Virus record (IMG/VR): IMGVR_UViG_3300031669_000001
Span: 62,001-126,000 of that record
Strand: one strand, 5' to 3'
DNA length: 64,000 bases
Part shown: positions 1-14,767 of the stretch, piece after piece
Layout of the letters: each line of letters opens with the position of its first letter
Numbering within the stretch: position 1 is the stretch's first letter
Translations under genes and position numbers: made by a program
Notes under the pieces: generated by a model
Told to the model about the DNA's origin: nothing
What the model saw: the letters and a program-made list of their open reading frames with translations, nothing else
Databases searched by the model: none

Positions 1-321
1 GATTCCTGCTACGGTAGCAGTTCCTGTACCCGAGCCTACAACGTGAGGATACATTCCATAAGGAGGATAATCACCAGGGGGGTTAGCTCTTGCTACGAAT
101 GTAACACCGACTGTATTAGAAGCTGCACCGATCAAAGTAAAGTCTGTAGTGCCGACAGTCGCTATAGTGTACGCAACGCCTACTACAAATTGGCCCGCAA
201 CAACAGGGGCATCATCGTAGCTCCATTGCTTGTCTGCTGACATGTTATCCAGCGTAAAAGTTACAAAGCGCGGATCAGCGTGTCCGTAGATAGTTAAAAT
301 TTTTCCTACTTGGGTTGTCAT
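1..321 (-). CDS. Virion structural protein, truncated by the window edge (not in ORF track)
   Basis: Manual translation from ATG at 321: MTTQVGKILTIYGH...AGQFVVGVAYTIATVGTTDFTLIGAASNTVGVTFVA...GSGTGTATVAGI; open to position 1; GAGG SD and TAAATA late motif upstream; module shared with gp13 and gp15. Confidence 0.7.
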   Translation of the reverse strand, partial: MTTQVGKILTIYGHADPRFVTFTLDNMSADKQWSYDDAPVVAGQFVVGVAYTIATVGTTDFTLIGAASNTVGVTFVARANPPGDYPPYGMYPHVVGSGTGTATVAGI

Positions 322-349: not shown

Positions 350-355
350 TATTTA
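350..355 (-). promoter_or_regulatory. T4-type late promoter core (GATAAATA)
   Basis: TAAATA about 30 nt upstream of the ATG at 321, overlapping the sulfotransferase stop codon. Confidence 0.55.
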
Positions 356-973
356 TCTTGAGTTCAAGAACGATTGATAATTATAGTCGAAGTATAGTAA
401 ATCATTTCGAAATGCGCGTTCTACAACTTTGATTGTGTCTTCACTGTATAACTTTGACCTATCTTTCAATTCATTCTTTTTAAGATTGATATTATCATGA
501 CTTAAGTCATTCTTCAGATTATATTTTTTGCAAAATTTATCATAATCTTCAGATAGATTTTCAAATTTTAATATGTCTGTAGCTATGACTTTATCATTAT
601 TTTCGACAAAATCATAACAAGGATTAAATTGGATTCTTTTACCTGCAAATTTTAATTCATAAGAAAGCACAAACTGTTCAAATGTCATATCAGGATTGAT
701 ATCCGTTCTACCCAATTTTTCATATTTTAATTGTTCTTGAGTTTGATTAGTTTTAGGTCTAAATTGATAAAATTCAAAAATTGAATAGAGTCTATCAAAA
801 GGATTCCTAACAATTGACATTATTGGTAAATGTGAATCTTCTTCTATTAAGACATTTTTAATAAATCCATGAGTTAAATAGCATTTACGTAAAAATCGCG
901 CATTTTGTTTATCTAAACTGTTACTAATAGATACACCTGCCGTTTTGGGTATATGAATAAAAATTATTTGCAA
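353..973 (-). CDS. Sulfotransferase family 2 protein
   Basis: [15 protein letters not shown]-binding motif and [12 protein letters not shown] motif. Confidence 0.85.
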
Positions 974-1509
974 TTTAAAACCTCATCTATTTTTTCTGAA
1001 CATAATAAAGAAGCATTAGTTTTAATTTTATCAATATCCCAATCCCACCAGCGCAATTCAAGTAATTTTTCTATCTCAATTTCTTTGAAACGATAACGAA
1101 TAATTTTTGAAGGATTACCAATAACAATTGCATAAGGTGGTATATCTTTAGCAATTACGGCTCCTGCTCCAATTACAGCTCCATGTCCTATCGTGACACC
1201 AGAAAGTATCATTGCATTAGATCCTATCCATACATCGTTCCCAATTATAGTTGGGCCTTTAGCGAAAGCTTCACCTAAATTAGAAATCCCAAAAGCTAGT
1301 CCCAACGGGAATGATGTTATATAATTAGTTCGATGTTCTCCTCCACCAAAAATTTGAATGCCATCAGCCATCGAACAAAAAGAACCTATTTTAATTTTAT
1401 CTGTATCAAGCCATAATTTTAGACTTGGTGATGACCCGTATGTAAATCTTCCAATTTCGATTCTAGGATCATCAGAAATTAAATAATCCATTACCATTAC
1501 CATTCCCAA
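964..1509 (-). CDS. Hexapeptide-repeat O-acetyltransferase (CatB/Vat-like fold)
   Basis: [54 protein letters not shown]; true start probably a few codons downstream. Confidence 0.85.
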
Positions 1510-2288
1510 AAATGACGTTTTAATGGTGTTCCAAGATCAAATTTATGAATGTTTGGATTGTCAGTGTGCTTTAAACCTGGAATATTCTTTACATTAAAAT
1601 GTTTGATATTTGTACGATCAACGTGCCAACCCTTTTTAGTTTCTTTAGTAGAATAGACTCTTTTTAGATATTTTTGTTTAGCATGCTGTTCACTAAGAAT
1701 AATGTAATGTCTTAAAAAGAATATATTTGGTGAAATCTTCAAATTGTGAGCATACGAATCCCATCCCAACATGTAATCTCCATTAGGATTAGTTGTTGTT
1801 CTTTTCCAAGCACGGTGGAGGCGAAACTTATTGTAAAAATAATAAGTTGACATTAGTTCAGCATAATTTTCAACGTAAAAGTCCTCTCCTGTTAGTGGTA
1901 CAAATACAATTTCATAGAAATTGATGCAGTTAAAGCCTGCTGCATCAGCTTCTACTATCCCCTCATATAACGTCTGTCCTTCTACAGAGGAACATAACCA
2001 TTCATCGGCGTCTGCGTGTACTATCCAGTCATATTTTGATGAAAGAATTATCTGCTTCTTGAGATTTAATTGATCTGCAAGTGAGAATTCACCAGACCAA
2101 GGAAGTCGCTCTATCCGCAGAAGTCCGTTTCCTAGAAATTCTTTAGCAATTTCTACTGAACGATCTGTTGAATCATTATCGATCAATATTACATCAAGAC
2201 CAGATTCAATTAGATGGGTAAGACAACGACGGATGTGGATTTCCTCGTTGCGAATACATACAATAGCTAACACTCTTATTTTATTCAT
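1497..2288 (-). CDS. Glycosyltransferase family 2
   Basis: [23 protein letters not shown] DxD motif. Confidence 0.85.
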
Positions 2289-3199
2289 TTTGTTAAAAAT
2301 ACCTGTTCAAATTTTTGCATAACGTTCTCAGGAGTATATTGCTGATATCCCCAACTGACTGTAGGTTTGTTAATCAAGCTGTTTAATACTGCTTTCAAAG
2401 AATCTTTATCAGCATACAAGTAAGCCTGTTGTCCCAATTCTTGTAAATGAGCCCTTTCATTAGAGTGAGCATAAGTAATGATAGGCTTTCCAGCTACAGC
2501 AAATTCTGCAACGGCTAAACCAAAAGTTTCTCCTCTTCCCCTGGCGTGAAGAAACGCATTTGAAGAATTTATGAACCTTCTCTTTTCACGAGGATCTACA
2601 GTAGCTTGCAAGAAGATAACTCTTTTCACGTCAAAGATCTTGCTTGGAGCTGCAGTGTTCATAAAGAGAAAATAAACGTCAGTTCTAGATTCTAGTAGTT
2701 CATTGATCGCATCCCATACAAAGGGGATGTCAAAACTATCTAACCCACCATAGCGTCCAAAAACCATTGACGTTACTGGAATCCCGAGTTCATTTCTAAG
2801 ATCGTCATCCGTTTGAAATATCTCAACGATATGTGGGACAAACGGTAAATTGTAACGTTCTCCCATCCATGGAGAGATGGTAGCGTAAATGGTGCCGTGA
2901 GGTTCATTGTCAAATACGCTATGAACTAGATAAGGAAGACCTGGAGAAAAACCATCCTTGACACCACTCTTAATATGATACAATGCATCTAACTTTGCAA
3001 AACCTTCGGTTACATCAGACACTCGACCAAATCTATTTTCAAAATTTACATACGCTGCAGCATCGTGTCTTCCACGAGCAAAGGTATATATCGAAGACTT
3101 ATTACCTAGGATTTCCTCATTGTAGTGAGCGTAGTTATAAAGTGCATTTCCCGTGCCTCTATTGTCTAATTGATTGCTCAAAAATCCTACGTGCATCAC
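2285..3199 (-). CDS. GT-B (GT4-like) glycosyltransferase
   Basis: FLHARGRGETFGLAVAEFAVAGKPII matches the E-x-FG-x7-E donor-binding motif. Confidence 0.75.
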   Translation of the reverse strand: MMHVGFLSNQLDNRGTGNALYNYAHYNEEILGNKSSIYTFARGRHDAAAYVNFENRFGRVSDVTEGFAKLDALYHIKSGVKDGFSPGLPYLVHSVFDNEPHGTIYATISPWMGERYNLPFVPHIVEIFQTDDDLRNELGIPVTSMVFGRYGGLDSFDIPFVWDAINELLESRTDVYFLFMNTAAPSKIFDVKRVIFLQATVDPREKRRFINSSNAFLHARGRGETFGLAVAEFAVAGKPIITYAHSNERAHLQELGQQAYLYADKDSLKAVLNSLINKPTVSWGYQQYTPENVMQKFEQVFLTK

Positions 3200-3804
3200 T
3201 TTATGCGCCTATAAGATGCTTTTCGTTGAGTTTTTTCAACGATCTCAAATCCATTTCTCAGCATCCAATCTTCAAGTTGATCGTGAGGATATACCAAGAT
3301 GTCATCAAATACCCACATTCCACCTAATGGAGTACGAGAATCAAAGAACTGAATCTCTCTCATCAATGAAGCTTGATTATGAGGGCCGTCAAAAAATACC
3401 AAAGCGTAGATATTTGAGATTTGCTTAAATTGATTATAAAATGGATACCCATCGGAGAATCTCAAGAAAAATTCGGTATCCTCCAAATTACACATCACAA
3501 TGTTTACAGGTTTACCTTGAGCATAATTGTAGATCGCCTCGTAACTTTCATTCCGCATGTCATTGGTATAATCGCACCTGATTACACAATTTTCATCCGT
3601 TGCGTATTCTATGTTACCGTATGGATCTATGCAGAGAACATTTCGTCCAAGATCTCCGTTAGCTAAAAGCGCATCGACGATCACTTTCATGCTTCCGCCT
3701 CGCCTTGTTCCAAGCTCACATACAGTTCCCTGGACATCTTTAATTGCAGTTGCAGCATTTCCTAATACGTGATAATCTGCAGAATCTGTTTCTAAGTTTT
3801 TCAT
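3196..3804 (-). CDS. Class I SAM-dependent methyltransferase (TylF/Methyltransf_24-like)
   Basis: CELGTRRGGS, VFFDGPH, GGMWVFDD. Confidence 0.75.
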   Translation of the reverse strand: MKNLETDSADYHVLGNAATAIKDVQGTVCELGTRRGGSMKVIVDALLANGDLGRNVLCIDPYGNIEYATDENCVIRCDYTNDMRNESYEAIYNYAQGKPVNIVMCNLEDTEFFLRFSDGYPFYNQFKQISNIYALVFFDGPHNQASLMREIQFFDSRTPLGGMWVFDDILVYPHDQLEDWMLRNGFEIVEKTQRKASYRRIK

Positions 3805-4535
3805 CTATCCAACCTGTTATGTGTAAAGAGTCCTTCGCCCTGCGCTACTTTAAAATCTTGCTGTTCCCACCATCGCTGAATAGATTTTTCAATATCTCCA
3901 TTGCCCATTGGAACTATGACATCTCTTAACCATTTAGTTTTGGCTATATAGGGATTATTTGTCCAGTTCGCATATTTGCTAGACGTAACATACCATTCTC
4001 GCAAACGTTGAATATGATTAGGGAATAAAATATCAGGATGTGCTTGCCAATGTAAACAATTTAGTAAATGACTTGGTGATGAGAGTTCTTTATCTTTATT
4101 CATCCCGTAAAGGGGTTTTCCAGGGTTTTCTCTGCTTCGTAATCTTATTAGGTCCGCGTTTCCATCTGTCAATAAGATCAACGCATCATGCAAAATAGAA
4201 CTAGGATCTAATAGCAATTTCCAATCATTCTCTAAAAATAAAAAATTCTCATTTTCTACAATATCAAGTAATTTTGTATACCCTTGAGCTATGCCTATAT
4301 TATTTTTTTCTCCAATATATTCATATCCAAATTCTTCTGCAATATCTTTATCTTCGCTTGACATTTCTTGAAAGAAGATAACTTTTTGCTTAGTCAACTT
4401 ATCTAATCCCAAAAATCTATAACTTTCAAGTGACACACGAAGGGTTCTATGTGATCTCCAGCTTAAAACTCCCATTGATAATTCATTCATAATCATGATC
4501 TTAGTAGTACTTTTTTGTAGTAGTTCTGTAATCAT
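3801..4535 (-). CDS. Putative GT-A glycosyltransferase
   Basis: NIGIAQG, FLFLENDW DxD-like motif, located inside the GT cluster. Confidence 0.5.
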   Translation of the reverse strand: MITELLQKSTTKIMIMNELSMGVLSWRSHRTLRVSLESYRFLGLDKLTKQKVIFFQEMSSEDKDIAEEFGYEYIGEKNNIGIAQGYTKLLDIVENENFLFLENDWKLLLDPSSILHDALILLTDGNADLIRLRSRENPGKPLYGMNKDKELSSPSHLLNCLHWQAHPDILFPNHIQRLREWYVTSSKYANWTNNPYIAKTKWLRDVIVPMGNGDIEKSIQRWWEQQDFKVAQGEGLFTHNRLDR

Positions 4536-5055
4536 AGAAGTAGAGAATCTTATTGATTCTCGCTTCTGTTTTGATCAAAGGCAACATTCTAGCTGCCCAT
4601 TCATCATCCTCACCAAAATTGATCTCCTTGAAGAGCTCAGTGCAATTGGAACGTTTATGAACCATTCGAGGGTTAGGACGTCTGTAATAAGCATCGGGCG
4701 CTTCATAATGTCCAAAATCCTTTCCATATTTTACGAGCTTTGGACGTTGACCATCGAAGGTAATCTCCACGTCGTACACTATGGTGTCAGCGTCAATATG
4801 AACTTGAGATAAGATTTGATCAACGAAATCAGGAGTAACTCGATCATCGTCATCTACATAGACGATGTACTTTCCTTTCGCCAACTTCAATAAATCATTT
4901 CTCTTCTCTCCAATGGTCCTTTTTGCATTATCAGAGATCACGAGTACTTCAACGTTATCCTTTAACTGAGGCTTTAATTGAGCCAGAAGAATATCGAGGA
5001 ATGCATTTTGTCTCTCAAGCAGAGAGCACACTAAAATCGATAGATCAATTGTCAT
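4501..5055 (-). CDS. Glycosyltransferase family 2
   Basis: TIGEKRNDLLKLAKGKYIVYVDDDD, FGEDDEW. Confidence 0.85.
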   Translation of the reverse strand: MTIDLSILVCSLLERQNAFLDILLAQLKPQLKDNVEVLVISDNAKRTIGEKRNDLLKLAKGKYIVYVDDDDRVTPDFVDQILSQVHIDADTIVYDVEITFDGQRPKLVKYGKDFGHYEAPDAYYRRPNPRMVHKRSNCTELFKEINFGEDDEWAARMLPLIKTEARINKILYFYDYRTTTKKYY

Positions 5056-5710
5056 GATGTATTTCTTTCTTTGGTTGATATTTTTTAAAGTTAATCTGAT
5101 CTTGTTTTTTAATATCTGAAAAGATATGAAGACGAGATGTAGTACTGAGTTCGGTCTGAACTTTTAAACCATTCATCGTATTTATAGTTCCATTACGAGT
5201 TAACAACCAGTTGTCACCGCACCAAATCAGCAAATCATCTGGTATTGGGATGTAATTTTTTTTGTTTACGAAGATCATGCATCCCCAACCCCACAAATTA
5301 GAAATTAACGTTTCTTGCACTTGAAAATTTTTATCTTGTTGTAGTATATAATTCTCACGTGCCATGCCGACGACTCCGTTATTTACCAAACTTCCATCAT
5401 CAAAGACCTTGAAAACTTCAGCGTTAAAGTTGATGTCATCGTTCACTAATGCGATATCATCATACTTCGCCTCCTTAACCCCCATATTCCATGCAGGGTT
5501 GACGTAGATGTTCTTTTCCATCTTCATGATCTTCAGCTTTGGGTGATCTTCTACCAGTGACTTATGAGCTGCGTCTGTCGTGAATGTGCCGATATCCGGG
5601 GCATTGTCTATGATGATTACCTCACCAACAGAGTCACAAGCGCAAAGATCTTTCACAAGTTGAACTATTCGTCTTGACTTCCAAAGAGTGGGGATTATGC
5701 AGGTAAACAT
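5045..5710 (-). CDS. Glycosyltransferase family 2 (tandem paralog A)
   Basis: CIIPTLW, IIIDNA, NIYVNPAWNMG, IALVNDDI, WCGDNW. Confidence 0.75.
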   Translation of the reverse strand: MFTCIIPTLWKSRRIVQLVKDLCACDSVGEVIIIDNAPDIGTFTTDAAHKSLVEDHPKLKIMKMEKNIYVNPAWNMGVKEAKYDDIALVNDDINFNAEVFKVFDDGSLVNNGVVGMARENYILQQDKNFQVQETLISNLWGWGCMIFVNKKNYIPIPDDLLIWCGDNWLLTRNGTINTMNGLKVQTELSTTSRLHIFSDIKKQDQINFKKYQPKKEIHHDN

Positions 5711-6345
5711 TAAGAATTTTTATATTTCGAATTAAAAATTGTAATATCATTGTTTGCAATACGCCTTAAAGCTCCATCGCTACTTGAACTACTCATTTCA
5801 GTAAGAACCTTCAATCCGTAGAGAGTATAAACTGGCATCTTCTTCGCCATCCAATTATCTCCACAGTAAATTAAAAGATCATTTGGAATTCTTACATAAT
5901 TGTCACGGTTGATCAAAATCATGCAGCCCCAACCATAATGAATGTTTCCGCGAAGAACTACTCTAAATTCTTCGTCAGCCGTTAGCTTTCTATAAGCTTC
6001 GCTGGACATGCCTACCGCGCCCTTTAACTCTTTCAAGCTACCTTCTTTGTCGAAGATCTTGAACACTTCAGCATTGAAGTTAATATCATCGTTAACGAGC
6101 GCGATGTCATCATACTTAGCCTCATGAACTCCTAGATTCCAGGCTTGATTCACGTAGATATTTTCTTTCATCTCTATGATTCTTAGCTTAGCGTGAACGT
6201 TGGTGTTTGTGTAAAGTTCTTTTGCATTCTTATGATCGTTGTCTATTACGATCACCTCTCCAACGCTGGTACAACGACATAAGTCTTTAACGAGATCTAT
6301 GATTCTTGGAGACTTCCAAATTGTAGGTATCACGCAAGTAAACAT
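5710..6345 (-). CDS. Glycosyltransferase family 2 (tandem paralog B)
   Basis: Near-identical motifs to 5045..5710 (MFTCVIPT, NIYVNQAWNLG, YDDIALVNDDINFNAEVFK). Confidence 0.75.
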   Translation of the reverse strand: MFTCVIPTIWKSPRIIDLVKDLCRCTSVGEVIVIDNDHKNAKELYTNTNVHAKLRIIEMKENIYVNQAWNLGVHEAKYDDIALVNDDINFNAEVFKIFDKEGSLKELKGAVGMSSEAYRKLTADEEFRVVLRGNIHYGWGCMILINRDNYVRIPNDLLIYCGDNWMAKKMPVYTLYGLKVLTEMSSSSSDGALRRIANNDITIFNSKYKNS

Positions 6346-6719
6346 TATTCGGCAGAACTGGAAAACTGCTTTTTAAAGTCTTCATTTTGCTTCTTGACAA
6401 GTTCAAGCTCCAGCAACAGTTCTCTGATGGTTTGCTTTGCTTGTGCTAGATCTACCTGCATCTCTACGATCTCAAATGCGCTCATCGCTTTATTCATCTT
6501 GTTGTTTTCTCCGAATATTCTTACTAAAATTTCTCGGCGCTCTTGTGGTTCGTAGATCGCCCAATCTGTAATCTCATCTATCGTCCTGAGACAACCTACA
6601 CACTTACCATTGTTTAGCCTACACAAACCTCGGCAGGGAGAAGATTCTCTGCCGAGGGATAGTAGATTTATAGGAGCTAGGTTGTAGTCAGGCCACTTAA
6701 ACGATTTCACACCCACCAC
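6345..6719 (-). CDS. DUF1289-like Cys-rich protein with coiled-coil tail
   Basis: SPCRGLCRL...CVGCLRTIDEITDW; start uncertain. Confidence 0.6.
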   Translation of the reverse strand: MVGVKSFKWPDYNLAPINLLSLGRESSPCRGLCRLNNGKCVGCLRTIDEITDWAIYEPQERREILVRIFGENNKMNKAMSAFEIVEMQVDLAQAKQTIRELLLELELVKKQNEDFKKQFSSSAE

Positions 6720-8556
6720 CAGAGCAAGCAGCCTCTTCCTTCAGAGTAGTGTTATCATCTCGTTCAACGATCTTGCTTAGGTCAATCTTACCTTTGCTCA
6801 AGACGGCCATCATCTCATCATATTTATCTTTGGTGATGTCTTCGAATGGGGCTTGAACGTAAGTTCCACCGTCGTAAGGAAGCACGGAGATGCCTGTGTA
6901 GAACTCGCGGTTCTTCCACATCCAACGGCCACACTTACCCCACTCCTTATGTTTCAGAGAGATGGTGCAAGAAACGTTGTGACGATTCTTACCTTCACGG
7001 TGACCAGTTTGAACCCATTCAATGTTGAACTTCTTGACACGTTCGAGCAGATCCAGGAAGTGTTCAGTCCTGAGGATAGAACCTTCCGGTGCCTTCTGAG
7101 GGAAGGACATGACGGCCTCGATGTGTGGCTTGTGGAAGCAATCTTCTACCAGACTTGGGAAGTTTTCCTTCATGTAATGATACAGGGCTTCATTCTTACC
7201 AACGCGCATGCGACGAACGTAGTAGTCATTGTGCCAAGCATGAATTCCAGATGAAGATCCTACAGCGCAACTTGTCGTGCCAGATGGCTTGATAGTAGTT
7301 GTTCGTGCAGCTGCATTGATCCCAAGGATTCCTGCAACGCGTGCATTTTCTTCCTTGACACCTTCAGCGGCCTGCTTGAGGTCAAGCTTCAAGATTGTGC
7401 CTGAACCGATGCCGGTGATGCCGACGCCGATCAATGCTTCCTTCTTGGTGATCTCTTCCCATTCAGGACGAAGGTAATGGAAGTCCGTGTAACCTGCCTG
7501 CAAAGTGCCAAGAAAGGCTGCAGCCTTAGTGCGAGCGTTTAGATCTTCCTGAGTCTCTACGTCAGAAGCATTCACCTCGGTGAGGTTACAGAACTGAAAT
7601 GGATTCAGGGAAATTTCACAGCAAGGGTTTGTGCCGAGGTTGACGTCATTCGTCCAAAAGATTCCAGGTTCACCTGCGCCTGACTCTTCAACGCGATCCC
7701 AGATGTCGTAGAACTCTTCATCTGTAATGTTGTTGCGTTCTAGGACGATAGAATTGTTTGCGCGACCACGCTGAGGGTTAAGTTCCCACCAAGAACCTGA
7801 CTTACATGACAACATGTCCATGTCATTCTTGGAGAACAACGAGATCATTGCAGCTCTGCGAATACCACCTGAGAGCACCGCGTCGGCAATGTGACACTGC
7901 ATGTCGTGAGCTTCTAATGATGTCAGCTTTCTGCCGGTTGCGTTGGAGAGAATAGCTCTGAGCTGTTCGATGCAGATGCGAAGAGGTGCAGAACCTGGAG
8001 CTTTACCACCACTCGTGATCAGCCTAGCACCCTTAGGGCGAATATCCCTGTAATCAAAGATTGGTTCTAGCTTACCATAAAAGTAAGATTCAACCAAGAT
8101 CTTGATAGCGTCAGCCCAACCTTCTATAGAATCTCCAATCAGGAATCTTCGATTTTTATTCTTTGGTCCTAACACGGTAGGAAGCTTCGCAACTTGATGC
8201 TGTTGAACTCCGTAGCCTACACCGGTTCCTCCAAGCAGAAGGAACATCGTTTCAGAGAATGCATCTGGGTGATCAACTGGCAAGTAAGCGCAGTTGTAGA
8301 TTCTGTTGTTTGATAACTCGATTGAGTTACCGCCAAACTGTAGAGACCTCATTGAAGGTAGAACCTTCTTTGGTATCACGTAATCGTGATATACCTTTTG
8401 AATCTCTTTCTTCAGCTTTGGATATTTTCTAACGTGCATAGCCAAGTTTCTTTGGCAGAGTTCTTCCCAAGTTTCACGTCTAGATATTTCTGGGATAAAG
8501 CGGGCGTATTTGTTGAAGATTGTTATTTCCGATAGGATTTTTTGTGAAACATCCAT
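6697..8556 (-). CDS. nrdJ: Class II (adenosylcobalamin-dependent) ribonucleotide reductase
   Basis: KYARF..RRETWEE, LPSMRSL, NCAY, TNPCCEI..FCNLTEV, TTIKPSGT, C-terminal ACSGGGCEI; start set at MDVSQ. Confidence 0.92.
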   Translation of the reverse strand: MDVSQKILSEITIFNKYARFIPEISRRETWEELCQRNLAMHVRKYPKLKKEIQKVYHDYVIPKKVLPSMRSLQFGGNSIELSNNRIYNCAYLPVDHPDAFSETMFLLLGGTGVGYGVQQHQVAKLPTVLGPKNKNRRFLIGDSIEGWADAIKILVESYFYGKLEPIFDYRDIRPKGARLITSGGKAPGSAPLRICIEQLRAILSNATGRKLTSLEAHDMQCHIADAVLSGGIRRAAMISLFSKNDMDMLSCKSGSWWELNPQRGRANNSIVLERNNITDEEFYDIWDRVEESGAGEPGIFWTNDVNLGTNPCCEISLNPFQFCNLTEVNASDVETQEDLNARTKAAAFLGTLQAGYTDFHYLRPEWEEITKKEALIGVGITGIGSGTILKLDLKQAAEGVKEENARVAGILGINAAARTTTIKPSGTTSCAVGSSSGIHAWHNDYYVRRMRVGKNEALYHYMKENFPSLVEDCFHKPHIEAVMSFPQKAPEGSILRTEHFLDLLERVKKFNIEWVQTGHREGKNRHNVSCTISLKHKEWGKCGRWMWKNREFYTGISVLPYDGGTYVQAPFEDITKDKYDEMMAVLSKGKIDLSKIVERDDNTTLKEEAACSGGGCEIV

Positions 8557-8617
8557 TTTGTTATTCCTTGTAGCTAAATTATTTTCTAAACCAGTTAGAA
8601 AAGGTGTTGCGCGCTGA

Positions 8618-8842
8618 TTATATCTGCTTGAGTCCGTGTGTTTCAATAAATTTTACTGCTTCATAAAAGTTGGTGATGATGGTGCACATCTGAGGACTTT
8701 TAGGATATGCGTAAACACCTACAGCCGTGGAAGGGTTTACGCAACCTCGTTTAAACTTCATGATAACTCCAAGATCATCTATGACTTCGTATGGAACATG
8801 CTCATATTCCAAGATAAATTTTATGGTGCTGAGCATGTCCAT
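8618..8842 (-). CDS. Small protein, possibly a degenerate glutaredoxin-like fold
   Basis: LEYEHVPYEVID and PQ..I pattern next to nrdJ, but no CxxC. Confidence 0.35.
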   Translation of the reverse strand: MDMLSTIKFILEYEHVPYEVIDDLGVIMKFKRGCVNPSTAVGVYAYPKSPQMCTIITNFYEAVKFIETHGLKQI

Positions 8843-9081: not shown

Positions 9082-9480
9082 TTAACTTGCTGCTGGTGCT
9101 GTAGGTGTAGCTGGGTCTGGAGTTGGTGAAACTTCAGGAGCTGGAGCTGGTTCTACTGGAGCTGGAGTTACAAAGTGGGCTTCAAGACGGCTGAAGAAGT
9201 CCTTAACGGCTGTTACATCTTTATCAAGAACGCTAGAAAAATCTGCTTCTAGAACTGCTAGATCTGCTTTGACAGTAGAAACTTTTGCAGCTGCGACGCT
9301 GTAAAGAGCTTCAACTTTTGCAAATTCTGCTTCAGCCTTTGTGACGCCGGCTTGTAATACTTCGCGGAATGTTGACATTTTTGGTTCCTCTTGTGGTTGT
9401 TGTGTGTTGTTTGTTGGTTCTGTTTTTGTACTGCCTGTTATGTTGCGGTAAATATCTTCTATCTCTGTGAGGATGTTCAT
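9082..9480 (-). CDS. Hypothetical coiled-coil protein with Pro-rich tail
   Basis: Ala-rich heptads and PAPVEPAPAP tail; strong internal SD (GAGGA) before MSTFREV suggests a second or true start. Confidence 0.55.
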   Translation of the reverse strand: MNILTEIEDIYRNITGSTKTEPTNNTQQPQEEPKMSTFREVLQAGVTKAEAEFAKVEALYSVAAAKVSTVKADLAVLEADFSSVLDKDVTAVKDFFSRLEAHFVTPAPVEPAPAPEVSPTPDPATPTAPAAS

Positions 9481-10325
9481 GTTGCTTTCTCCAATGATTT
9501 CTTTATCTTTTCCACCTCTGCTTGAGTGTTGTAACCCATCAAAGGATGTTTCGTTTCATATACATACGATGGATCGCCGATGTTGTAAAGATAATGAACG
9601 ATGTTTAGAAACGTCAATTCACCGGACTGGGTTGTAAATTTGACGTGACCGTCTTGATCAATTTTCAACGCTGAATAACGCATCTCTTGTAAAGCAGAAG
9701 CTACGGAATTCCACGTAACACCAAAAATTGATTGATCATGCCAGCCTTCATCTCTTACCTCGCCAAATTTAATGAAGTCGGCAGACATCGCCACGCTCAT
9801 ATCTACTCTGTCTGCAATCAGGCTGGTATTTATAGCGACGTATGGCCTGTACTCTAAAACAGCTGGAATTATAATCGATGACGCAGCAGGAGATTTTAGT
9901 CTCTCCAGCATTTCATCAACGATCTCCGCTGACCTAAGATGAGCATCACCCCATAAAATTACCGCTTGAGGAGTGACGTCGAAGCTCTTGGAAACTTTCT
10001 CAAACGCCTCCAATACAGCTTTGCCGTCTCCTCCACCACTCTCGATGCCGATAATTTTGATGTTGTTTGCGTGAAAACCTACGTGTGTATCATACACAGC
10101 TTCACTGACATAATCTTCAGCCTCATGAGATACAATGACGAAAACCTTTCTGAACTTATGCGCTACCAAATTCAGCGTGTTCTCTAAGTTTGATTTGCCA
10201 TTGATTTCTACGAGAGCTTTAGGAATGTTGATGTCACCCATTCTAGTGCCCTTGCCCGCCGCGATGATCCAAAGATCATGCTTCAAGTTGGCCTCAACTT
10301 GAGAAAGTCTAGAAAAACCACTCAT
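9477..10325 (-). CDS. Sugar-phosphate nucleotidyltransferase (GlmU-N/MurU-like)
   Basis: IIAAGKGTRMG..IPKAL, GGGDGKAV, ILWGD, GYNTQAEV. Confidence 0.85.
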   Translation of the reverse strand: MSGFSRLSQVEANLKHDLWIIAAGKGTRMGDINIPKALVEINGKSNLENTLNLVAHKFRKVFVIVSHEAEDYVSEAVYDTHVGFHANNIKIIGIESGGGDGKAVLEAFEKVSKSFDVTPQAVILWGDAHLRSAEIVDEMLERLKSPAASSIIIPAVLEYRPYVAINTSLIADRVDMSVAMSADFIKFGEVRDEGWHDQSIFGVTWNSVASALQEMRYSALKIDQDGHVKFTTQSGELTFLNIVHYLYNIGDPSYVYETKHPLMGYNTQAEVEKIKKSLEKAT

Positions 10326-12148
10326 CTCAGATTCATCCTGTAGTACATTCCAAGAGTTAGCAAAAAGACATAGGTGTCTTTTGGGTTCTTAACATTTACA
10401 AAATCCACTCTATCGTTGATGAATAGAGAGTGATCATTACCACCTTCATGCGATTCATCTCCAATGACTGTAATACGACCTTTGAGTTCTTTTAAGATGA
10501 CGTTCTTTGTAGCACCTAGAGAAATATCAATCGTCGTTCTTCCAGTAGCTTCTACAGTTAGATCCTTGAAAAGAATCCTGATGAGAGTTAAAAGCGGCAG
10601 CCTGTATTCTGGATCGATAGGCTTGATGGAAACTATCGTGTTGCTTCTATTTTGTATCTTAGACAGATTGATACCAATCTTCTCAAGGTTTGAGATTATG
10701 TGAGTGATCTGATCTTGTGAGAAGATGAATTTAGGTGCTATGATTTTTCCGGCGCTCAACGTTGTTGATGTTGAAAAATCTTGATCTGTCTCCGACGTCA
10801 ACTCATATCTGTTTACACCACCTTCCGCGAAGATAGATATGCGCGGAGATAACATTCGCAGATCACCGAAATTTATAGCCTTAATGGAATTCCCCGTGCA
10901 GATGCAGAAGCTTTTTCCCATCGATCTCAAAGTGTTCGAACAACGAATTAACAGCTCCTTGTTACTCTTCGAAGCTTCTTGATATGTAGAATTTCTGCCA
11001 ACCAAAGTATCGTCATAATCAAAAACGAAAGTGTCATTTAACATAGTTGGAAAGTAGTAATCAAACATGATCATCTTCATGAGCTTGCGACCGTCATGAG
11101 TCTTTTTATTTCCATTTACCGCGTCAGCAAGATCTGCTGATATGTATTTCCAACCTCTGTCAGTCATGAATTTAAAATCTGCTTGCATGTCAGGATCTGA
11201 TTTATCGTTGAACATGCAAACGATGTCTGTCAAGTCGAGGAATCTGGTACCTAGAATTGTTAGCATCTCACTAGCAGATACTCCAGCCATGTCTTTGTCT
11301 TGTGTATTGTTGACAACGAGAAACTTTTTAGCCTTAGATTTCTCTATAGATTCTTTGAACAAGTCATGCTGGTATGTAGGGATAAGAGATGACCATTGAG
11401 TACCAGATGAGAATATGATGACGTCAGCTTCATCAATGGCTATCAACGCATCGTTACACAAGACCCCTTTAGTTTCTTTTCCATGAGGGTCTGTGAAGAA
11501 AGTTGTTACAATCTTATCATCAGGATTATTCCAATCGACTATGTCGCCTTCATCTGAGATGATTCTTCCAGATTCTGTCCACGCTTGTAGGTAGAGTGAA
11601 TGATCATCCGCTACGATGACTGCATCTTCAGGAATCTGAAGAACGTTGCGCGCCATGATCTTACCCGCTTCTGCAAGTGAAAAGTTAGGTGCAGCTAATC
11701 CAGCATAAACGATGTTTGCGAGGGAGAAGTCAACGTAATCAACTTGAACAGCTTTCGGAAATGAGAAGTAATTCTCAACACCCTCGATCAAAGTGTTGAT
11801 CGTCAACGAATCAAGCTTGGGTGCTCGTTCATCCACGATAGACATCTTGTTGATGAGATTCAAGCACAATTCTTTTGCGTCTTGAGCCGGGCAATCAAAG
11901 CGCTTATTGAGTAGAGCTATGAGATTTTTATTCCCGCCTTGAAGTCCATATCGAAGAACCTGGTTCTTCCTAAGGTCAGACGGGCCGTTGATCTTTCCGT
12001 CAAGCACCTTTCTAACAGTGCCTGTCGACTTGCCGTTGTCTTGTGTGTTTGTGATGACACGAACGTCTACATTATTACCGTAGAGTTGGTGGAGCCCAGT
12101 TTGGATGGCGACACTTCCCGTGCCGCCGGAGAAAATCAATACATTCAT
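10322..12148 (-). CDS. CofD/YvcK(UPF0052)-family protein fused to HAD-IIB (phosphomannomutase-like) domain
   Basis: N-term FSGGTGS, NTQDNGKSTG, GPSDLRKN, EADVIIFSSGTQWSSLIP; C-term FVFDYDDTL, CTGN, FAEGG, GRTTIDI, IGDESHEGGND. Confidence 0.85.
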   Translation of the reverse strand: MNVLIFSGGTGSVAIQTGLHQLYGNNVDVRVITNTQDNGKSTGTVRKVLDGKINGPSDLRKNQVLRYGLQGGNKNLIALLNKRFDCPAQDAKELCLNLINKMSIVDERAPKLDSLTINTLIEGVENYFSFPKAVQVDYVDFSLANIVYAGLAAPNFSLAEAGKIMARNVLQIPEDAVIVADDHSLYLQAWTESGRIISDEGDIVDWNNPDDKIVTTFFTDPHGKETKGVLCNDALIAIDEADVIIFSSGTQWSSLIPTYQHDLFKESIEKSKAKKFLVVNNTQDKDMAGVSASEMLTILGTRFLDLTDIVCMFNDKSDPDMQADFKFMTDRGWKYISADLADAVNGNKKTHDGRKLMKMIMFDYYFPTMLNDTFVFDYDDTLVGRNSTYQEASKSNKELLIRCSNTLRSMGKSFCICTGNSIKAINFGDLRMLSPRISIFAEGGVNRYELTSETDQDFSTSTTLSAGKIIAPKFIFSQDQITHIISNLEKIGINLSKIQNRSNTIVSIKPIDPEYRLPLLTLIRILFKDLTVEATGRTTIDISLGATKNVILKELKGRITVIGDESHEGGNDHSLFINDRVDFVNVKNPKDTYVFLLTLGMYYRMNLR

Positions 12149-12156
12149 GTAGTGGG

Positions 12157-13179
12157 TTAGAGTTCAAGGAGTGCGCTCTTCACTCGTGGGGAGGCGGTAG
12201 TTACGTACGGCATGTAGCTAGCCAGATCTTCTGGAGATATGACAGGCTTGCGCGTATTTTCTTTCTTACAGCACATGATGGTATAACATTGTGCTAGATG
12301 AGGGTACATGTTTGCGAGAACTGCAGTTGCAAATCCTGTGCTGATCGTCTTCATGCGATCGTACATCTTACGCTGCTCAGGAGTAAACTTGTGCTTCATT
12401 GGAACTGCTTTGCCCAGCCAACCAGTGATCTGGTATGGACGTAGACCAGCTTCTTCAACTTCAGCCAGCATCTCTGGGAGGGTGAATTCATAGAGGTGAT
12501 TCTCTGGCCACGTGAACTGTTGTCCTTCATGTTTCTTTGGGTTTGGAGTGGAGATAACGATCACACCGTCATCTGTCAACATCTCCTTGGAATCCTTCAA
12601 CACGCTCTTCACACAGGGGATGCCGATGTGTTCAAGAACCTCCTGAAGCAAGATCATCTCATACTTCATCTGCTTCGCAGTTGGATCACTTTGAAACATC
12701 TTGTTGTGCCAATCAAGCAGGCGTTCTTCCATCGCGTCCATCAGGTACACATTGACTTGCTTCTTGTCAGAGTTTGCTTCGGCGTAGATCGCGTTAGCCT
12801 TCTTCACGATCTCTGGCCGAACTTCAAGACCGACGTAGTTGACGCGAGGGCGACCTGGGCTAGAGAAAGAAGACATCCAGAAGGTGTAGAACGTTGCGAT
12901 AGAACAACCAAGATCCAACACGTTCAACGCGCGTTCGATCTCTGGATAACGCAGACCGTAAAGTTCATTGCAGGCGGTGGCGTAACGGAAGATGTTAGCC
13001 ATATCCCAGCCTGAGCTGAAGTTTACCTTACCGAGAGTCGCCTTTGTAAAGAGGGCTTCATTGGAATCATCCCACAGGCGCTCATGTGAATCGAGTCGCT
13101 GGTTGGAATCATGCGCAACGTCTGCGATCTGATCATTCGCAAGTTCATCGGCGGTTGCGTCAATTGTTGTTGTGTTCAT
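12157..13179 (-). CDS. Class I SAM-dependent methyltransferase
   Basis: VLDLGCS, YVGLE, LMDA, LQEVLEHI, VISTPN. Confidence 0.8.
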   Translation of the reverse strand: MNTTTIDATADELANDQIADVAHDSNQRLDSHERLWDDSNEALFTKATLGKVNFSSGWDMANIFRYATACNELYGLRYPEIERALNVLDLGCSIATFYTFWMSSFSSPGRPRVNYVGLEVRPEIVKKANAIYAEANSDKKQVNVYLMDAMEERLLDWHNKMFQSDPTAKQMKYEMILLQEVLEHIGIPCVKSVLKDSKEMLTDDGVIVISTPNPKKHEGQQFTWPENHLYEFTLPEMLAEVEEAGLRPYQITGWLGKAVPMKHKFTPEQRKMYDRMKTISTGFATAVLANMYPHLAQCYTIMCCKKENTRKPVISPEDLASYMPYVTTASPRVKSALLEL

Positions 13180-13201
13180 TTACTTTCCTTTATTGGTTAG
13201 C

Positions 13202-13230
13202 ATTCTATCACGCGTTGAGTGGTTTGTAAA
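13202..13230 (-). promoter_or_regulatory. Early sigma70-type promoter TTTACA-17-TAGAAT with GTGA extended -10
   Basis: Read directly on the minus strand upstream of the methyltransferase. Confidence 0.75.
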
Positions 13231-13294
13231 TTTTCAGACAGTCGCCGGTTCGCCGGTTGTCTATTGAATTGTTCCAAGCGATTCATGACAGCCG

Positions 13295-13642
13295 TCAGGT
13301 TGCATCTACATCGATGCCAGCCCCGTAGTTGTCGATAGCATGATCCAAGATCGATTGACCGATGATGCCAAGCTGAACCGCGCGAAGCTGAGCGACTGTC
13401 ATTACAAGATCTTCACCACAAACATCTTTGTACAGCATCCAGATGCGGCTTCCATAGATGCCGTGAGTGTCGAGAGCCAAAACTGATCCGAGTCCACCCA
13501 TAAAATCTTGAGGGTCAATATGTGCAGCGTTCTGGTAAAGCTGCATGATGACGTTCATCGCGCCAGGATTTCCTTCGGCAAGCTTTATTACTACATCCAT
13601 AAAGCTATCTTCGAGAGTTACGCGGTCTTTAGTCTTGTTCAT
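13295..13642 (-). CDS. Hypothetical protein
   Basis: Coupled ORF with SD; LAEGNPGA motif, no function recognised. Confidence 0.6.
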   Translation of the reverse strand: MNKTKDRVTLEDSFMDVVIKLAEGNPGAMNVIMQLYQNAAHIDPQDFMGGLGSVLALDTHGIYGSRIWMLYKDVCGEDLVMTVAQLRAVQLGIIGQSILDHAIDNYGAGIDVDAT

Positions 13643-14748: not shown

Positions 14749-14767
14749 ACAGTTCCTCATTTTTGTT

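What the first reader, a model, noticed from the sequence alone, without database searches (positions are those of the whole stretch)
353..6345. Phage-encoded glycan-building cluster with sulfation, acetylation and methylation
Seen: nine tightly coupled genes (sulfotransferase, O-acetyltransferase, five GT-A and one GT-B glycosyltransferases, O-methyltransferase) directly upstream of a virion structural gene. The distal genes at 353-2288 look more AT-rich, suggesting stepwise acquisition. Established: giant eukaryotic viruses glycosylate their own fibrils; this is rarely demonstrated for bacteriophages. Inference: it builds a decorated, sulfated oligosaccharide on virion proteins or on the host surface (superinfection exclusion). 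Expression timing is unclear; one TAAATA at 6821-6826 inside nrdJ could be chance.
Basis: partly seen in the sequence, partly recalled or inferred. Interest (0 to 1): 0.65.

Follow-up and report, generated by a model that had tools for sequence, protein, structure and literature searches.

The report
Jumbo-phage sulfated glycan gene island
A 345-kb soil jumbo phage carries a recently acquired island of nine soluble sugar-building and sugar-decorating enzymes, sulfotransferase included, that most likely puts a decorated oligosaccharide on a phage-made molecule (virion protein favoured, its glucosylated DNA the main rival); sequence alone cannot name the target.

Summary
Window 353-6345 carries nine overlapping or abutting minus-strand genes. 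In transcription order they are GT-A x2 (57% identical paralogs), GT-A, GT-A, O-methyltransferase, GT-B, GT-A, hexapeptide acetyltransferase and carbohydrate-type sulfotransferase. The distal three genes are the most AT-rich stretch of the 345-kb genome.

The cluster is an accessory island. It is absent from every complete relative tested. It is also mosaic: its genes have bacterial, marine-viral, uncultured-phage and actinophage affinities.

All nine proteins lack membrane segments. The phage encodes no priming transferase, SDR-type sugar epimerase/dehydratase or APS kinase, so sugar donors and PAPS should come from the host.

The gene directly downstream has its own T4-type late promoter (NATAAATA) overlapping the sulfotransferase stop codon, but it matches no structural family.

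The target is unresolved. Virion-protein glycosylation is my best reading (about 0.4). Supporting it are one GT that is 37-40% identical to glycosyltransferases of mycobacteriophages and Gordonia phages, including the genus of Che8 (shown to be glycosylated), and the late-gene adjacency.

The serious rival is extension of a DNA glycan (about 0.25). The phage has a dCMP-hydroxymethylase-type enzyme and a T4 beta-glucosyltransferase homologue nearby, and homologues of two cluster GTs sit beside such an enzyme in another phage.

Phage glycan clusters are known; the sulfotransferase, acetyltransferase and methyltransferase combination is a new variant.

The parts
5710..6345 (-). GT-A glycosyltransferase (GT2d), first gene of the cluster and tandem paralog of the next gene
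   Evidence: It is 57% identical to 5045-5710. Pfam GT2 scores 17.2 bits, below the cut-off. phrog_29879 galactosyl transferase, E 1.3e-4. The AlphaFold model failed (pLDDT 40). Its start overlaps the DUF1289 stop by 1 nt.
5045..5710 (-). GT-A glycosyltransferase (GT2c)
   Evidence: Pfam GT2 scores 23.4 bits against a cut-off of 23.3. Homologues at 30-37% identity lie beside homologues of 3801-4535 in IMG/VR loci L049, L056, L057, L059 and L064. No match in GenBank phages. It contains a coding-strand TATAAATA at 5186-5179.
4501..5055 (-). GT-A glycosyltransferase (GT2b) of the actinophage type
   Evidence: phrog_8858, E 1.7e-37. It is 35-40% identical to annotated glycosyltransferases in 61 Mycobacterium and Gordonia phage records, including the N-terminal GT domain of Cheoctovirus WillSterrel gp99, a GT/methyltransferase fusion. 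It has a DDDD motif.
3801..4535 (-). GT-A-fold glycosyltransferase of a virus-dominated family with no Pfam model
   Evidence: No Pfam, PHROG or NCBIfam hit. The Atlas model (pTM 0.86) matches viral GT family 2 clusters at TM 0.88. 241 homologues at about 45-53% identity. It is paired with the GT-B homologue in 13 of 24 IMG/VR loci. The true start is probably Met14 or Met16.
3196..3804 (-). SAM-dependent O-methyltransferase (Methyltransf_24/TylF type)
   Evidence: Pfam PF13578, E 6.1e-8; TylF, E 1.9e-3. A homologue at 39.8% identity lies next to the GT-B homologue in L051, L056, L057 and L064.
2285..3199 (-). GT-B (GT1/GT4-like) glycosyltransferase
   Evidence: Pfam Glycos_transf_1, 28.3 bits, above the cut-off. 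It is 37% identical to Synechococcus phage S-SKS1 SWZG_00038, which sits among a fucosyltransferase and a sugar epimerase. It is 47-54% identical to neighbours of the 3801-4535 homologues. It is absent from G010 and G011.
1497..2288 (-). GT-A glycosyltransferase (GT2a) of bacterial affinity, linked to sulfation
   Evidence: It is 48-57% identical to bacterial GT2 proteins (Starkeya and others) that sit beside sulfotransferases, pyruvyl transferase or CysD/CysNC. Sequence hits in the PDB: GmaR 1e-7, then SunS and ThuS. AlphaFold pLDDT 90; the top Foldseek hits are SunS/ThuS at 1.8e-9 with TM about 0.5. It has a DAD motif.
964..1509 (-). Left-handed beta-helix acetyltransferase of the XAT (CatB/Vat-like) class
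   Evidence: Hexapep, E 4.4e-12. CatB model 149 bits against a cut-off of 350, and Vat 139 against 300, so neither is an equivalog. PDB CatB8, E 4e-39. phrog_16087, E 1e-49. GC3 0.18, fifth lowest in the genome.
353..973 (-). Carbohydrate-type sulfotransferase (Sulfotransfer_2), last gene of the cluster
   Evidence: PF03567, 31.9 bits, above the cut-off. phrog_3347. PKTAG and RNPFDRLYS motifs are present. It is 43-46% identical to proteins on marine virus-like contigs. GC 0.266. Its stop codon overlaps the GATAAATA promoter word of the next gene.
6345..6719 (-). DUF1289 cysteine-rich small protein, coupled to the first GT; role unknown
   Evidence: PF06945, E 4.6e-15. It shares 1 nt with the GT2d start. 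GATAAATA lies at 6828-6821, 101 nt upstream of its start.
6697..8556 (-). Class II (B12-dependent) ribonucleotide reductase heading the same gene string
   Evidence: Pfam RNR barrel and RNR-II insertion domain. 61-65% identical to Oceanospirillum, Microcystis and Vibrio phage proteins. The real ATG is at 8556. A sigma-70-like TTGAAA-18-TATAAT lies at 8646-8617. Absent from G010 and G011.
1..321 (-). 5' part of a 187-aa late gene (genome 61758-62321) directly downstream; a candidate virion protein or acceptor
   Evidence: GATAAATA lies 28 nt before its ATG, and no terminator separates it from the sulfotransferase gene. It has no family or confident fold and no homologue in four relatives.

Best explanation
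The island is a cytoplasmic assembly line, run entirely by soluble phage enzymes, that builds a short hetero-oligosaccharide on phage virion proteins.

Proposed steps (inferred from family chemistry):
1. One GT-A attaches the first sugar to Ser/Thr of a late protein. The candidate is the SunS/GmaR-like GT2a.
2. The other four GT-A enzymes and the GT-B extend the chain, using host nucleotide sugars.
3. The Methyltransf_24/TylF-type enzyme O-methylates a sugar with SAM.
4. The hexapeptide enzyme O-acetylates with acetyl-CoA.
5. The Sulfotransfer_2 enzyme adds sulfate from host PAPS.

The distal block GT2a-acetyltransferase-sulfotransferase is a later add-on that caps a core also found in other phages (GT2c/d, GT-A 3801-4535, methyltransferase, GT-B).

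Shown here: the gene content, the intact cofactor motifs, the solubility of the proteins, the accessory and mosaic origin, the late promoter on the next gene, and the homologies.

Inferred: the acceptor, the order of the steps, the sugars and the timing.
For: 1. All nine proteins lack transmembrane segments. The genome has no Bac_transf or WecA-type priming enzyme. This fits a soluble macromolecular acceptor rather than a lipid carrier.
2. GT2b is 35-40% identical to glycosyltransferases of 61 Mycobacterium and Gordonia phages. These include Cheoctovirus (cluster F1) genomes, where it forms the GT domain of a GT/methyltransferase fusion next to two more GTs. F1 phages Che8 and Rita carry glycans on their capsid proteins (PMC11256854, citing Freeman 2023).
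3. The next three genes downstream each have the late-promoter word NATAAATA. In this genome that word precedes the tail sheath, the head-tail adaptor and a tail fibre, and 46 of its 74 copies lie within 60 nt upstream of a start codon. No terminator separates the cluster from the first of these genes.
4. These three proteins are acidic and rich in Ser, Thr, Ala and Gly. One shares a domain with a virion protein.
5. GT2a's best sequence and fold matches in the PDB are peptide or protein glycosyltransferases: GmaR, SunS and ThuS.
6. GT2a homologues in bacteria recur next to sulfotransferases or PAPS synthesis genes, so the sulfotransferase is functionally tied to the glycan.
7. Three complete 115-120 kb phages carrying the GT-A/GT-B pair have no thymidylate-synthase-family enzyme, and one also has no C5 cytosine methylase. 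The pair therefore does not need a hydroxymethyl or hydroxy pyrimidine.
8. Six contigs identical to 1961-5093 occur in a soil metatranscriptome library. This is weak evidence, because DNA carry-over is not excluded.
Against: - No glycan or acceptor has been observed.
- The cluster sits in a gene string with nucleotide and DNA-modification genes (nrdJ, NTP transferase, CofD-HAD, T4-BGT-like), not in the structural module.
- A sigma-70-like promoter upstream of nrdJ suggests early expression.
- In locus L060, homologues of the GT-B and of 3801-4535 lie directly after a thymidylate-synthase-like gene and a dNMP kinase, the classic layout of DNA hypermodification.
- The Ser/Thr-rich insertions in the major capsid protein are shared with relatives G010 and G011, which lack at least the GT-B and most GT2 genes of the cluster. 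They therefore do not track the island.
- The fold matches of GT2a have TM about 0.5 and barely separate peptide GTs from polysaccharide GTs.
Confidence: 0.4

Rival explanations
1. DNA glycan extension. The phage makes 5-hydroxymethyl-dCMP and glucosylates it in DNA with the T4-BGT-like enzyme. The nine enzymes then lengthen and decorate that sugar into an oligosaccharide on cytosine, to escape restriction and modification-dependent nucleases.
For: - The thymidylate-synthase-like protein matches CMP/dCMP hydroxymethylases (MilA 2.5e-20, T4 gp42 1.2e-19) better than ThyA. It has Asp at the position that selects cytosine, by the criteria in PMC13326640.
- The T4-BGT homologue lies at 13639-14760, in the same co-directional gene string.
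- L060 has the order dNMP kinase, TS-like, GT-B homologue, methyltransferase, homologue of 3801-4535, GT17.
- Other homologues sit in replication modules, next to PolA, ThyX or nrdJ.
- The BGT/NTP-transferase module, nrdJ and at least the GT-B and most GT2 genes of the cluster are all missing from G010 and G011, so they share one variable region.
- Oligosaccharides on phage DNA have precedent: tri-arabosyl-5-hydroxycytosine and the several GTs of RL38J1 (PMC13326640), and the diverse glycans of bioRxiv 10.1101/2023.12.21.572611.
Against: - Sixteen phage loci keep the five-gene module (TS-like, kinase, BGT, CofD-HAD, NTP transferase). None has a cluster gene within 10 kb, except a 25%-identical sulfotransferase about 15 kb from the BGT gene in LR756500.
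- Relatives RsoM2USA, G001 and G002 have no GT2 at all.
- Complete phages carry the GT-A/GT-B pair without any TS-family enzyme.
- GT2b's relatives are in actinophages, where the demonstrated target is the virion.
- Sulfate would add negative charge to packaged DNA. No methylated, acetylated or sulfated DNA sugar is reported in the papers found.
Confidence: 0.25
2. Host envelope remodelling. The soluble GTs act at the inner face of the membrane on the host's undecaprenyl-linked O-antigen or capsule intermediates. Host flippases then export an altered, sulfated surface glycan, giving superinfection exclusion or protecting progeny from adsorbing to cell debris.
For: - GT2a's closest relatives are bacterial. 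They lie in loci with sulfotransferases and pyruvyl transferase, and in one case with an ABC-2 polysaccharide exporter and a giant GT2/GT1 protein.
- The GT-B homologue in cyanophage S-SKS1 lies among a fucosyltransferase and a nucleotide-sugar epimerase.
- Multi-GT clusters in cyanophages are commonly read as cell-surface modification (PMC12801897).
Against: - The phage has no membrane protein, priming transferase, flippase-type or acyl-carrier component in or near the cluster.
- It is a T4-like lytic-type jumbo phage (gp23 capsid protein, UvsW, late promoters).
- Known phage serotype converters act with membrane enzymes; this point is from my own knowledge, not tested here.
Confidence: 0.2
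3. The genes do not form one pathway. They are a plasticity-zone collection of unrelated accessory genes. For example, the XAT-class acetyltransferase might acetylate a xenobiotic such as an antibiotic, and the GTs might act on small molecules.
For: - The acetyltransferase is closest to CatB/Vat enzymes: PDB CatB8 at 4e-39, and 39-43% identity to prophage Vat/Cat genes.
- The island is mosaic, with three compositional tiers.
Against: - All nine genes overlap or abut, which suggests translational coupling.
- Four of them (GT2c/d, GT-B, methyltransferase, GT-A 3801-4535) recur together in other phages.
- GT2a and a sulfotransferase recur together in bacteria.
- The acetyltransferase scores far below the CatB and Vat equivalog cut-offs.
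Confidence: 0.1

Closest known systems
Mycobacteriophage virion glycosylation genes (Che8/Rita, cluster F1 Cheoctovirus; Freeman et al. 2023, as cited in PMC11256854 and PMC12619734)
   Same: Both are phage-encoded, soluble GT2 enzymes combined with a methyltransferase. GT2b is 37% identical over 183 residues to the GT domain of WillSterrel gp99, a GT/methyltransferase fusion in the same genus as Che8.
   Different: Here there are nine genes rather than three or four, with an added GT-B, an XAT-class acetyltransferase and a sulfotransferase. The phage is a T4-like jumbo myovirus from soil. The other eight proteins have no match to the WillSterrel genes. Glycosylation has not been demonstrated here.
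Phage DNA sugar hypermodification (T4 alpha/beta-glucosyltransferases; arabinosyl-5-hydroxycytosine of RB69/DLP3; the GT-A/GT-B enzymes of Pyle et al.)
   Same: The phage has the base-modification genes (a hydroxymethylase-type TS homologue, a dNMP kinase and a BGT homologue). The cluster lies in the same gene string. One related locus (L060) places cluster homologues right after the TS homologue.
   Different: The cluster is not part of the conserved five-gene module in 16 loci. Its homologues also occur in complete phages without TS-family enzymes. Sugar-decorating sulfo-, acetyl- and methyltransferases are not described for DNA glycans in the papers found.
Multi-glycosyltransferase 'cell wall synthesis and modification' clusters of large cyanophages (S-SCSM2R with 13 GTs, P-SSM2, S-SCSM1; S-SKS1)
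   Same: These are large phages with runs of GT genes whose target is untested. The GT-B is 37% identical to S-SKS1 SWZG_00038 (PMC12801897).
   Different: The cyanophage clusters carry nucleotide-sugar epimerases and KDO genes. This phage has no SDR-type epimerase or dehydratase and adds a sulfotransferase. PMC12801897 does not mention a sulfotransferase.
Uncultured-phage module: GT-A (3801-4535 family) + GT-B + Methyltransf_24/21 + GT2
   Same: Homologues at 38-54% identity lie side by side in 13 of 24 IMG/VR loci and in three metagenome contigs. Up to four of the nine genes co-occur.
   Different: This module has no name, no published description that I found and no match in 50,697 GenBank phage records. 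Those loci lack the GT2a-acetyltransferase-sulfotransferase block, except for one weak sulfotransferase neighbour in L062.
Bacterial sulfated-glycan loci (Starkeya sp. 3C and metagenomic bacteria)
   Same: A GT2a homologue at 48-57% identity lies next to Sulfotransfer_2 or Stf0-type sulfotransferases, pyruvyl transferase or CysD/CysNC.
   Different: The organisms are high-GC bacteria (0.62-0.67), whereas the phage gene has GC 0.35. The sulfotransferases are not orthologous to the phage one; only the PAPS-loop motif matches. The products of these loci are unknown.

Membership tests
Phage virion (protein) O-glycosylation system, Che8 type | Phage-encoded glycosyltransferase(s) homologous to those of phages with glycosylated virions | tested here: met
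   GT2b is 35-40% identical to actinophage GTs, including Cheoctovirus gp99. Only one of the nine proteins matches.
Phage virion (protein) O-glycosylation system, Che8 type | Glycan covalently attached to capsid or tail-tube subunits | not testable with these tools
   This needs glycoprotein staining or mass spectrometry of virions.
Phage virion (protein) O-glycosylation system, Che8 type | Acceptor segment in structural proteins that tracks the presence of the GT genes | tested here: not met
   The capsid protein has two Ser/Thr/Gly/Ala/Pro-rich insertions, but relatives G010 and G011, which lack the cluster's GT-B, have them too. Its C-terminus has no Ser/Thr-rich tail.
Phage virion (protein) O-glycosylation system, Che8 type | Expression together with late structural genes | tested here: inconclusive
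   A late-promoter gene lies directly downstream, and coding-strand ATAAATA words sit at 5184 and 6826. Local composition predicts about 1.7 such words, and a sigma-70-like promoter precedes nrdJ.
Phage DNA sugar-hypermodification pathway | Enzyme that creates a hydroxymethyl or hydroxy pyrimidine attachment point | tested here: met
   A TS homologue at genome 291721-292683 is closest to MilA and T4 dCMP hydroxymethylase. It lies 225 kb from the cluster.
Phage DNA sugar-hypermodification pathway | The GT genes cluster with, and are co-inherited with, the base-modifying enzyme | tested here: inconclusive
   Against: 16 loci with the module have none of the nine genes within 10 kb, apart from a 25%-identical sulfotransferase about 15 kb from BGT in LR756500; three relatives have no GT2; and the GT pair occurs in genomes without TS-family enzymes. 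For: locus L060, and a shared variable region with BGT and NTP transferase.
Phage DNA sugar-hypermodification pathway | Glycosylated base in virion DNA | not testable with these tools
   This needs nucleoside LC-MS.
Lipid-carrier (Wzx/Wzy or ABC) surface polysaccharide pathway | Priming phosphoglycosyl transferase and membrane export or polymerase components | tested here: not met
   The phage has no Bac_transf or Glycos_transf_4. None of the nine proteins has a transmembrane segment. Host supply cannot be excluded. Flippase and polymerase families were not searched.
Carbohydrate sulfotransferase (Pfam Sulfotransfer_2) | Family score above the cut-off plus the 5'-PSB and 3'-PB PAPS-binding motifs | tested here: met
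   31.9 bits against a cut-off of 22. The PKTAGVS and RNPFDRLYS motifs are present; I recognised these motifs from my own knowledge.
CatB/Vat xenobiotic acetyltransferase (resistance equivalogs) | Score above the NCBIfam equivalog cut-off | tested here: not met
   CatB scores 149 against 350 and Vat 139 against 300. The protein belongs to the same structural class (XAT) but does not qualify as either enzyme.

The most novel reading that the evidence does not exclude
The island decorates the phage's own DNA. The glucosyl-hydroxymethylcytosine made by the neighbouring BGT module would be extended into a methylated, acetylated and sulfated oligosaccharide. This would be the first sulfated, and by far the most elaborate, nucleic-acid glycan known.
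Probability: 0.15. Interest if true: 0.9.

Novelty: new variant of a known kind. Interest (0 to 1): 0.5.

Why it matters
Phage glycobiology is young. Only a few virion glycans (in mycobacteriophages) and DNA glycans are chemically known, and none is reported as sulfated in the literature I could search.

This island gives a compact, testable set of nine soluble enzymes: six GTs, an O-methyltransferase, an acetyltransferase and a PAPS-dependent sulfotransferase. All could be expressed in E. coli.

- If the product sits on virions, it would extend the glycan-shield idea to Gram-negative-type jumbo phages and add a charged glycan. That bears on adsorption in soil and on immune recognition in therapy.
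- If the product sits on DNA, it would be a new class of hypermodification.

The work also defines an unnamed GT-A/GT-B/methyltransferase module that is widespread in uncultured phages, with hundreds of homologues.

Tried and rejected
- Megablast of 12 kb against GenBank phages found no match.
- The search for related loci with GT2d alone gave one weak hit.
- tblastn of 3801-4535 and of GT2c against GenBank phages found nothing.
- The PDB sequence search gave nothing usable for the GT-B, methyltransferase, sulfotransferase and GT2c, and only marginal hits for GT2b.
- The AlphaFold model of GT2d from a three-sequence alignment was unusable (pLDDT 40), so no fold search was run on it.
- The Atlas search of the 187-aa downstream protein was uninformative (pLDDT 0.49, TM below 0.4).
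- The Tet/JBP search had no positive control, so I used C5-methylase presence as a proxy.
- Metagenome contigs L029-L031 could not be searched whole.
- I tested whether the Ser/Thr-rich capsid insertions track the island and rejected the idea. They are clade-wide and track the GT2-TPR pair instead.
- A genome-wide scan for Ser/Thr-rich windows did not single out acceptors.
- Sigma-70-like sites are not enriched.
- The ATAAATA words inside the operon are not above local compositional expectation.
- Freeman et al. 2023 (PMC10527164) is not held, so I cite it only through papers that cite it.
- No complex prediction was run, because enzyme-substrate contacts are transient and no binding claim is made.
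- Only one read-laying run was available, so no silent control stretch could be laid to rule out DNA carry-over in the RNA library.

Full report
**Setting**

The window is bases 62001-126000 of a 345,069-bp viral contig with direct terminal repeats, rated complete.
- The phage is a T4-like jumbo phage. It has a gp23-type major capsid protein, a tail sheath, UvsW and RecA/UvsX-like proteins, and Acb1.
- The DNA comes from a soil metagenome. A relative at 90-99% identity occurs in a freshwater-sediment metagenome.
- The closest cultured relative is Ralstonia phage RsoM2USA, at 30-65% protein identity.

**The observation**

Nine minus-strand ORFs fill 353-6345 with overlaps of 1-13 nt.

In transcription order they are:

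| Coordinates | Name used here | Assignment |
|---|---|---|
| 5710-6345 | GT2d | GT-A |
| 5045-5710 | GT2c | GT-A |
| 4501-5055 | GT2b | GT-A |
| 3801-4535 | (no name) | GT-A fold |
| 3196-3804 | methyltransferase | Methyltransf_24/TylF O-methyltransferase |
| 2285-3199 | GT-B | GT1/GT4-like |
| 1497-2288 | GT2a | GT-A |
| 964-1509 | acetyltransferase | hexapeptide, XAT class |
| 353-973 | sulfotransferase | Sulfotransfer_2 |

- Pfam, PHROG and NCBIfam support seven of the nine directly.
- GT2d is below the Pfam cut-off but is a 57% identical tandem paralog of GT2c.
- 3801-4535 has no family hit. Its Atlas model aligns at TM 0.88 with viral 'glycosyltransferase family 2' clusters.
- Catalytic or cofactor motifs are visible: DxD-type motifs in the GT-As, and PKTAG plus RNPxxRxxS in the sulfotransferase.
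- The AT-richness is real and extreme. The lowest-GC 2-kb window of the genome lies over the distal genes. The sulfotransferase and acetyltransferase are the 7th and 5th lowest of 490 genes for GC3, while GT2b, GT2c and GT2d are compositionally ordinary.

**An accessory, mosaic island**

Composition falls into three tiers, and the tiers match different affinities.
- GT2a is 48-57% identical to bacterial GT2 proteins.
- The sulfotransferase is 43-46% identical to proteins on marine virus-like contigs.
- The GT-B, the methyltransferase, 3801-4535 and GT2c/d recur as neighbours in uncultured phages.
- GT2b matches only Mycobacterium and Gordonia phages among 50,697 GenBank phage records.

Complete relatives lack the island.
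- RsoM2USA, G001 (343 kb) and G002 (368 kb) have no GT2-family match at all.
- The closest complete relatives by capsid protein are G010 and G011, at 78-82% identity. They lack the GT-B and have only the separate GT2-TPR pair described below.
- The freshwater relative does cover the GT2a/GT-B junction. It is about 99% identical there but only about 90% identical in GT2c, which points to recent exchange.

**What the cluster needs from outside**

- None of the nine proteins has a membrane segment.
- The genome has no APS kinase, SDR-type epimerase/dehydratase, Bac_transf or WecA-type transferase.
- Sugar nucleotides and PAPS should therefore come from the host, and the phage does not prime a lipid carrier itself.
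- In bacteria, GT2a homologues sit beside sulfotransferases, pyruvyl transferase or CysD/CysNC. This ties the sulfotransferase to the glycan rather than to chance neighbourhood.

**Transcription signals**

- The word NATAAATA behaves as this phage's late promoter. Of 74 ATAAATA copies, 46 lie within 60 nt upstream of a same-strand start, among them the tail sheath, the head-tail adaptor and a tail fibre.
- The 187-aa gene directly downstream of the sulfotransferase has GATAAATA 28 nt before its ATG, overlapping the sulfotransferase stop codon. The next two genes (165 and 199 aa) also have such words, strong ribosome-binding sites and flanking terminators.
- These three genes are therefore late genes. 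Only the 199-aa protein has any virion-like hits, and they are weak. The 187-aa protein could not be identified.
That is 5.5 times the genome's within-gene density, but local composition predicts about 1.7.
- A near-consensus sigma-70-like site, TTGAAA-18-TATAAT, lies 60 nt before the true nrdJ start at 8556.
- Timing therefore stays open. Early transcription from the nrdJ promoter is plausible, late transcription is plausible, and both together are plausible.
- A soil metatranscriptome library holds six contigs identical to 1961-5093. DNA carry-over could not be controlled for.

**Which molecule receives the glycan?**

Evidence for virion protein:
- The homology of GT2b to glycosyltransferases of Cheoctovirus phages, whose members Che8 and Rita carry capsid glycans (PMC11256854).
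- The soluble enzyme set.
- The adjacency to late genes.
- The GmaR, SunS and ThuS matches of GT2a, which are weak at TM about 0.5.
- The GT-A/GT-B pair occurs in complete phages without any thymidylate-synthase-family enzyme, and in one without a C5-methylase either.

Evidence for DNA:
- The phage has a hydroxymethylase-type TS homologue and a T4-BGT homologue.
- The island lies in the same variable, co-directional region as the BGT/CofD-HAD/NTP-transferase genes and nrdJ. G010 and G011 lack BGT, the NTP transferase and nrdJ.
- In L060 the order is dNMP kinase, TS-like, GT-B homologue, methyltransferase, homologue of 3801-4535, GT17.
- Oligosaccharide DNA modifications have precedent (PMC13326640; bioRxiv 10.1101/2023.12.21.572611).

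Evidence against DNA:
- Sixteen loci keep the five-gene module without any cluster gene within 10 kb. The only exception nearby is a 25%-identical sulfotransferase in LR756500, about 15 kb from its BGT gene.
- A sulfate on packaged DNA seems costly; this is my inference.

Host-surface remodelling is possible only with host priming and export machinery.

My estimates are: virion protein 0.40, DNA 0.25, host envelope 0.20, no single pathway or small-molecule targets 0.10, and about 0.05 for readings not listed.

**A test that failed**

I asked whether structural proteins carry acceptor segments that track the island.
- The capsid protein has two insertions rich in Ser, Thr, Gly, Ala and Pro, of about 25 and 16 residues. 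They are absent from six more distant relatives.
- G010 and G011, which lack the island, have the same insertions.
- The insertions track instead the GT2-TPR pair, which also hits GmaR.
- That pair lies directly upstream of the TS homologue in all three genomes, so it is itself ambiguous between a DNA and a protein target.

**Comparison with what is known, and novelty**

- Phage glycan clusters are known in mycobacteriophages and in large cyanophages with up to 13 GTs (PMC12801897). DNA glycosylation by phages is well established.
- New here are a PAPS-type sulfotransferase, an XAT-class acetyltransferase and an O-methyltransferase coupled to six GTs in a jumbo phage.
- Also new is the recognition of a recurrent GT-A/GT-B/methyltransferase module that has no Pfam model for its GT-A and no GenBank phage representative.
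- No paper in the searchable library links sulfotransferases to phage glycans.
- I rate it a new variant of a known kind, with interest 0.5.

Noticed in passing
window 9477-14760, plus genome 290583-292683 (L005 6583-8683): A five-gene module is contiguous in RsoM2USA, LR756500 and 14 IMG/VR loci: hydroxymethylase-type TS homologue, dNMP kinase, T4-BGT homologue, CofD + HAD/PMM fusion, and NTP_transf_3. In this phage it is split in two. The CofC/CofD-like pairing suggests an NDP-activated phospho-group transferred to a hydroxyl, perhaps a phosphodiester decoration of glucosyl-hmC DNA. No paper was found.
   Followed up: partly
genome 292881-295000 (L005 8881-11000), minus strand: Two GT2 + TPR proteins, whose GT domain hits Listeria GmaR at 2.3e-7, lie directly upstream of the TS homologue. 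The same order is kept in relatives G010 and G011, which lack BGT. They could be GT-A DNA glycosyltransferases or protein O-glycosyltransferases.
   Followed up: partly
genome 295067-299299 (L005 11067-15299), plus strand: A 1410-aa collagen-repeat protein with a late promoter word, followed by a glycine-rich-domain protein. It is transcribed divergently from the GT2-TPR genes across a 66-bp gap.
   Followed up: no
window 57337-58689, minus strand (major capsid protein): Two insertions rich in Ser, Thr, Gly, Ala and Pro (about 25 and 16 aa) are present in this phage and its closer clade (G010, G011 and others). They are absent from RsoM2USA, G001, G002, G015, G016 and G017.
   Followed up: yes
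genome-wide; examples at genome 61088, 61730 and 62355: NATAAATA acts as a T4-like late promoter word. 46 of 74 ATAAATA copies lie within 60 nt upstream of a start. TAAATA is depleted overall, with 143 found against about 330 expected.
   Followed up: yes
window 8556-8646: The nrdJ ORF as listed starts too early. Homologues align from residue ~29-31 and the real ATG is at 8556. A sigma-70-like TTGAAA-18-TATAAT (11 of 12 matches) lies at 8646-8617. nrdJ itself is accessory: it is absent from G010 and G011 and is closest to Oceanospirillum, Microcystis and Vibrio phages at 61-65% identity.
   Followed up: partly
window 12157-13179, minus strand: A 340-aa SAM methyltransferase sits between the BGT homologue and CofD-HAD. 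The same position holds a 42% identical gene in locus L024, so some versions of the DNA module include a methyltransferase.
   Followed up: no
window 9082-9480, minus strand: A 132-aa acidic protein with a Pro/Thr/Ala-rich C-terminal tail lies between the NTP transferase and the DksA-type zinc-finger gene. It matches no family.
   Followed up: no
genome 204819-205931, plus strand (L039): A 370-aa protein with a late promoter word has weak GT1 and glycosyltransferase-PHROG hits. It may be a further, late-expressed GT-B outside the cluster.
   Followed up: no
window 353-973: The database holds a 155-aa version of the sulfotransferase (P0003) that starts at an internal Met and loses the PKTAG PAPS-binding loop. 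The TTG start at 973 gives the full 206-aa protein, which another assembly also predicts.
   Followed up: yes
window 15633-16124, minus strand: An anti-CBASS Acb1 homologue (PF23474, E 3e-29) lies just upstream of the DNA-modification genes.
   Followed up: no
genome 60426-61025 (L002 13426-14025), minus strand: The C-terminal ~80 residues of the 199-aa late protein form a mobile domain. It is shared with the 653-aa head-tail-adaptor-like late protein of this phage and with three proteins of relative G002.
   Followed up: partly
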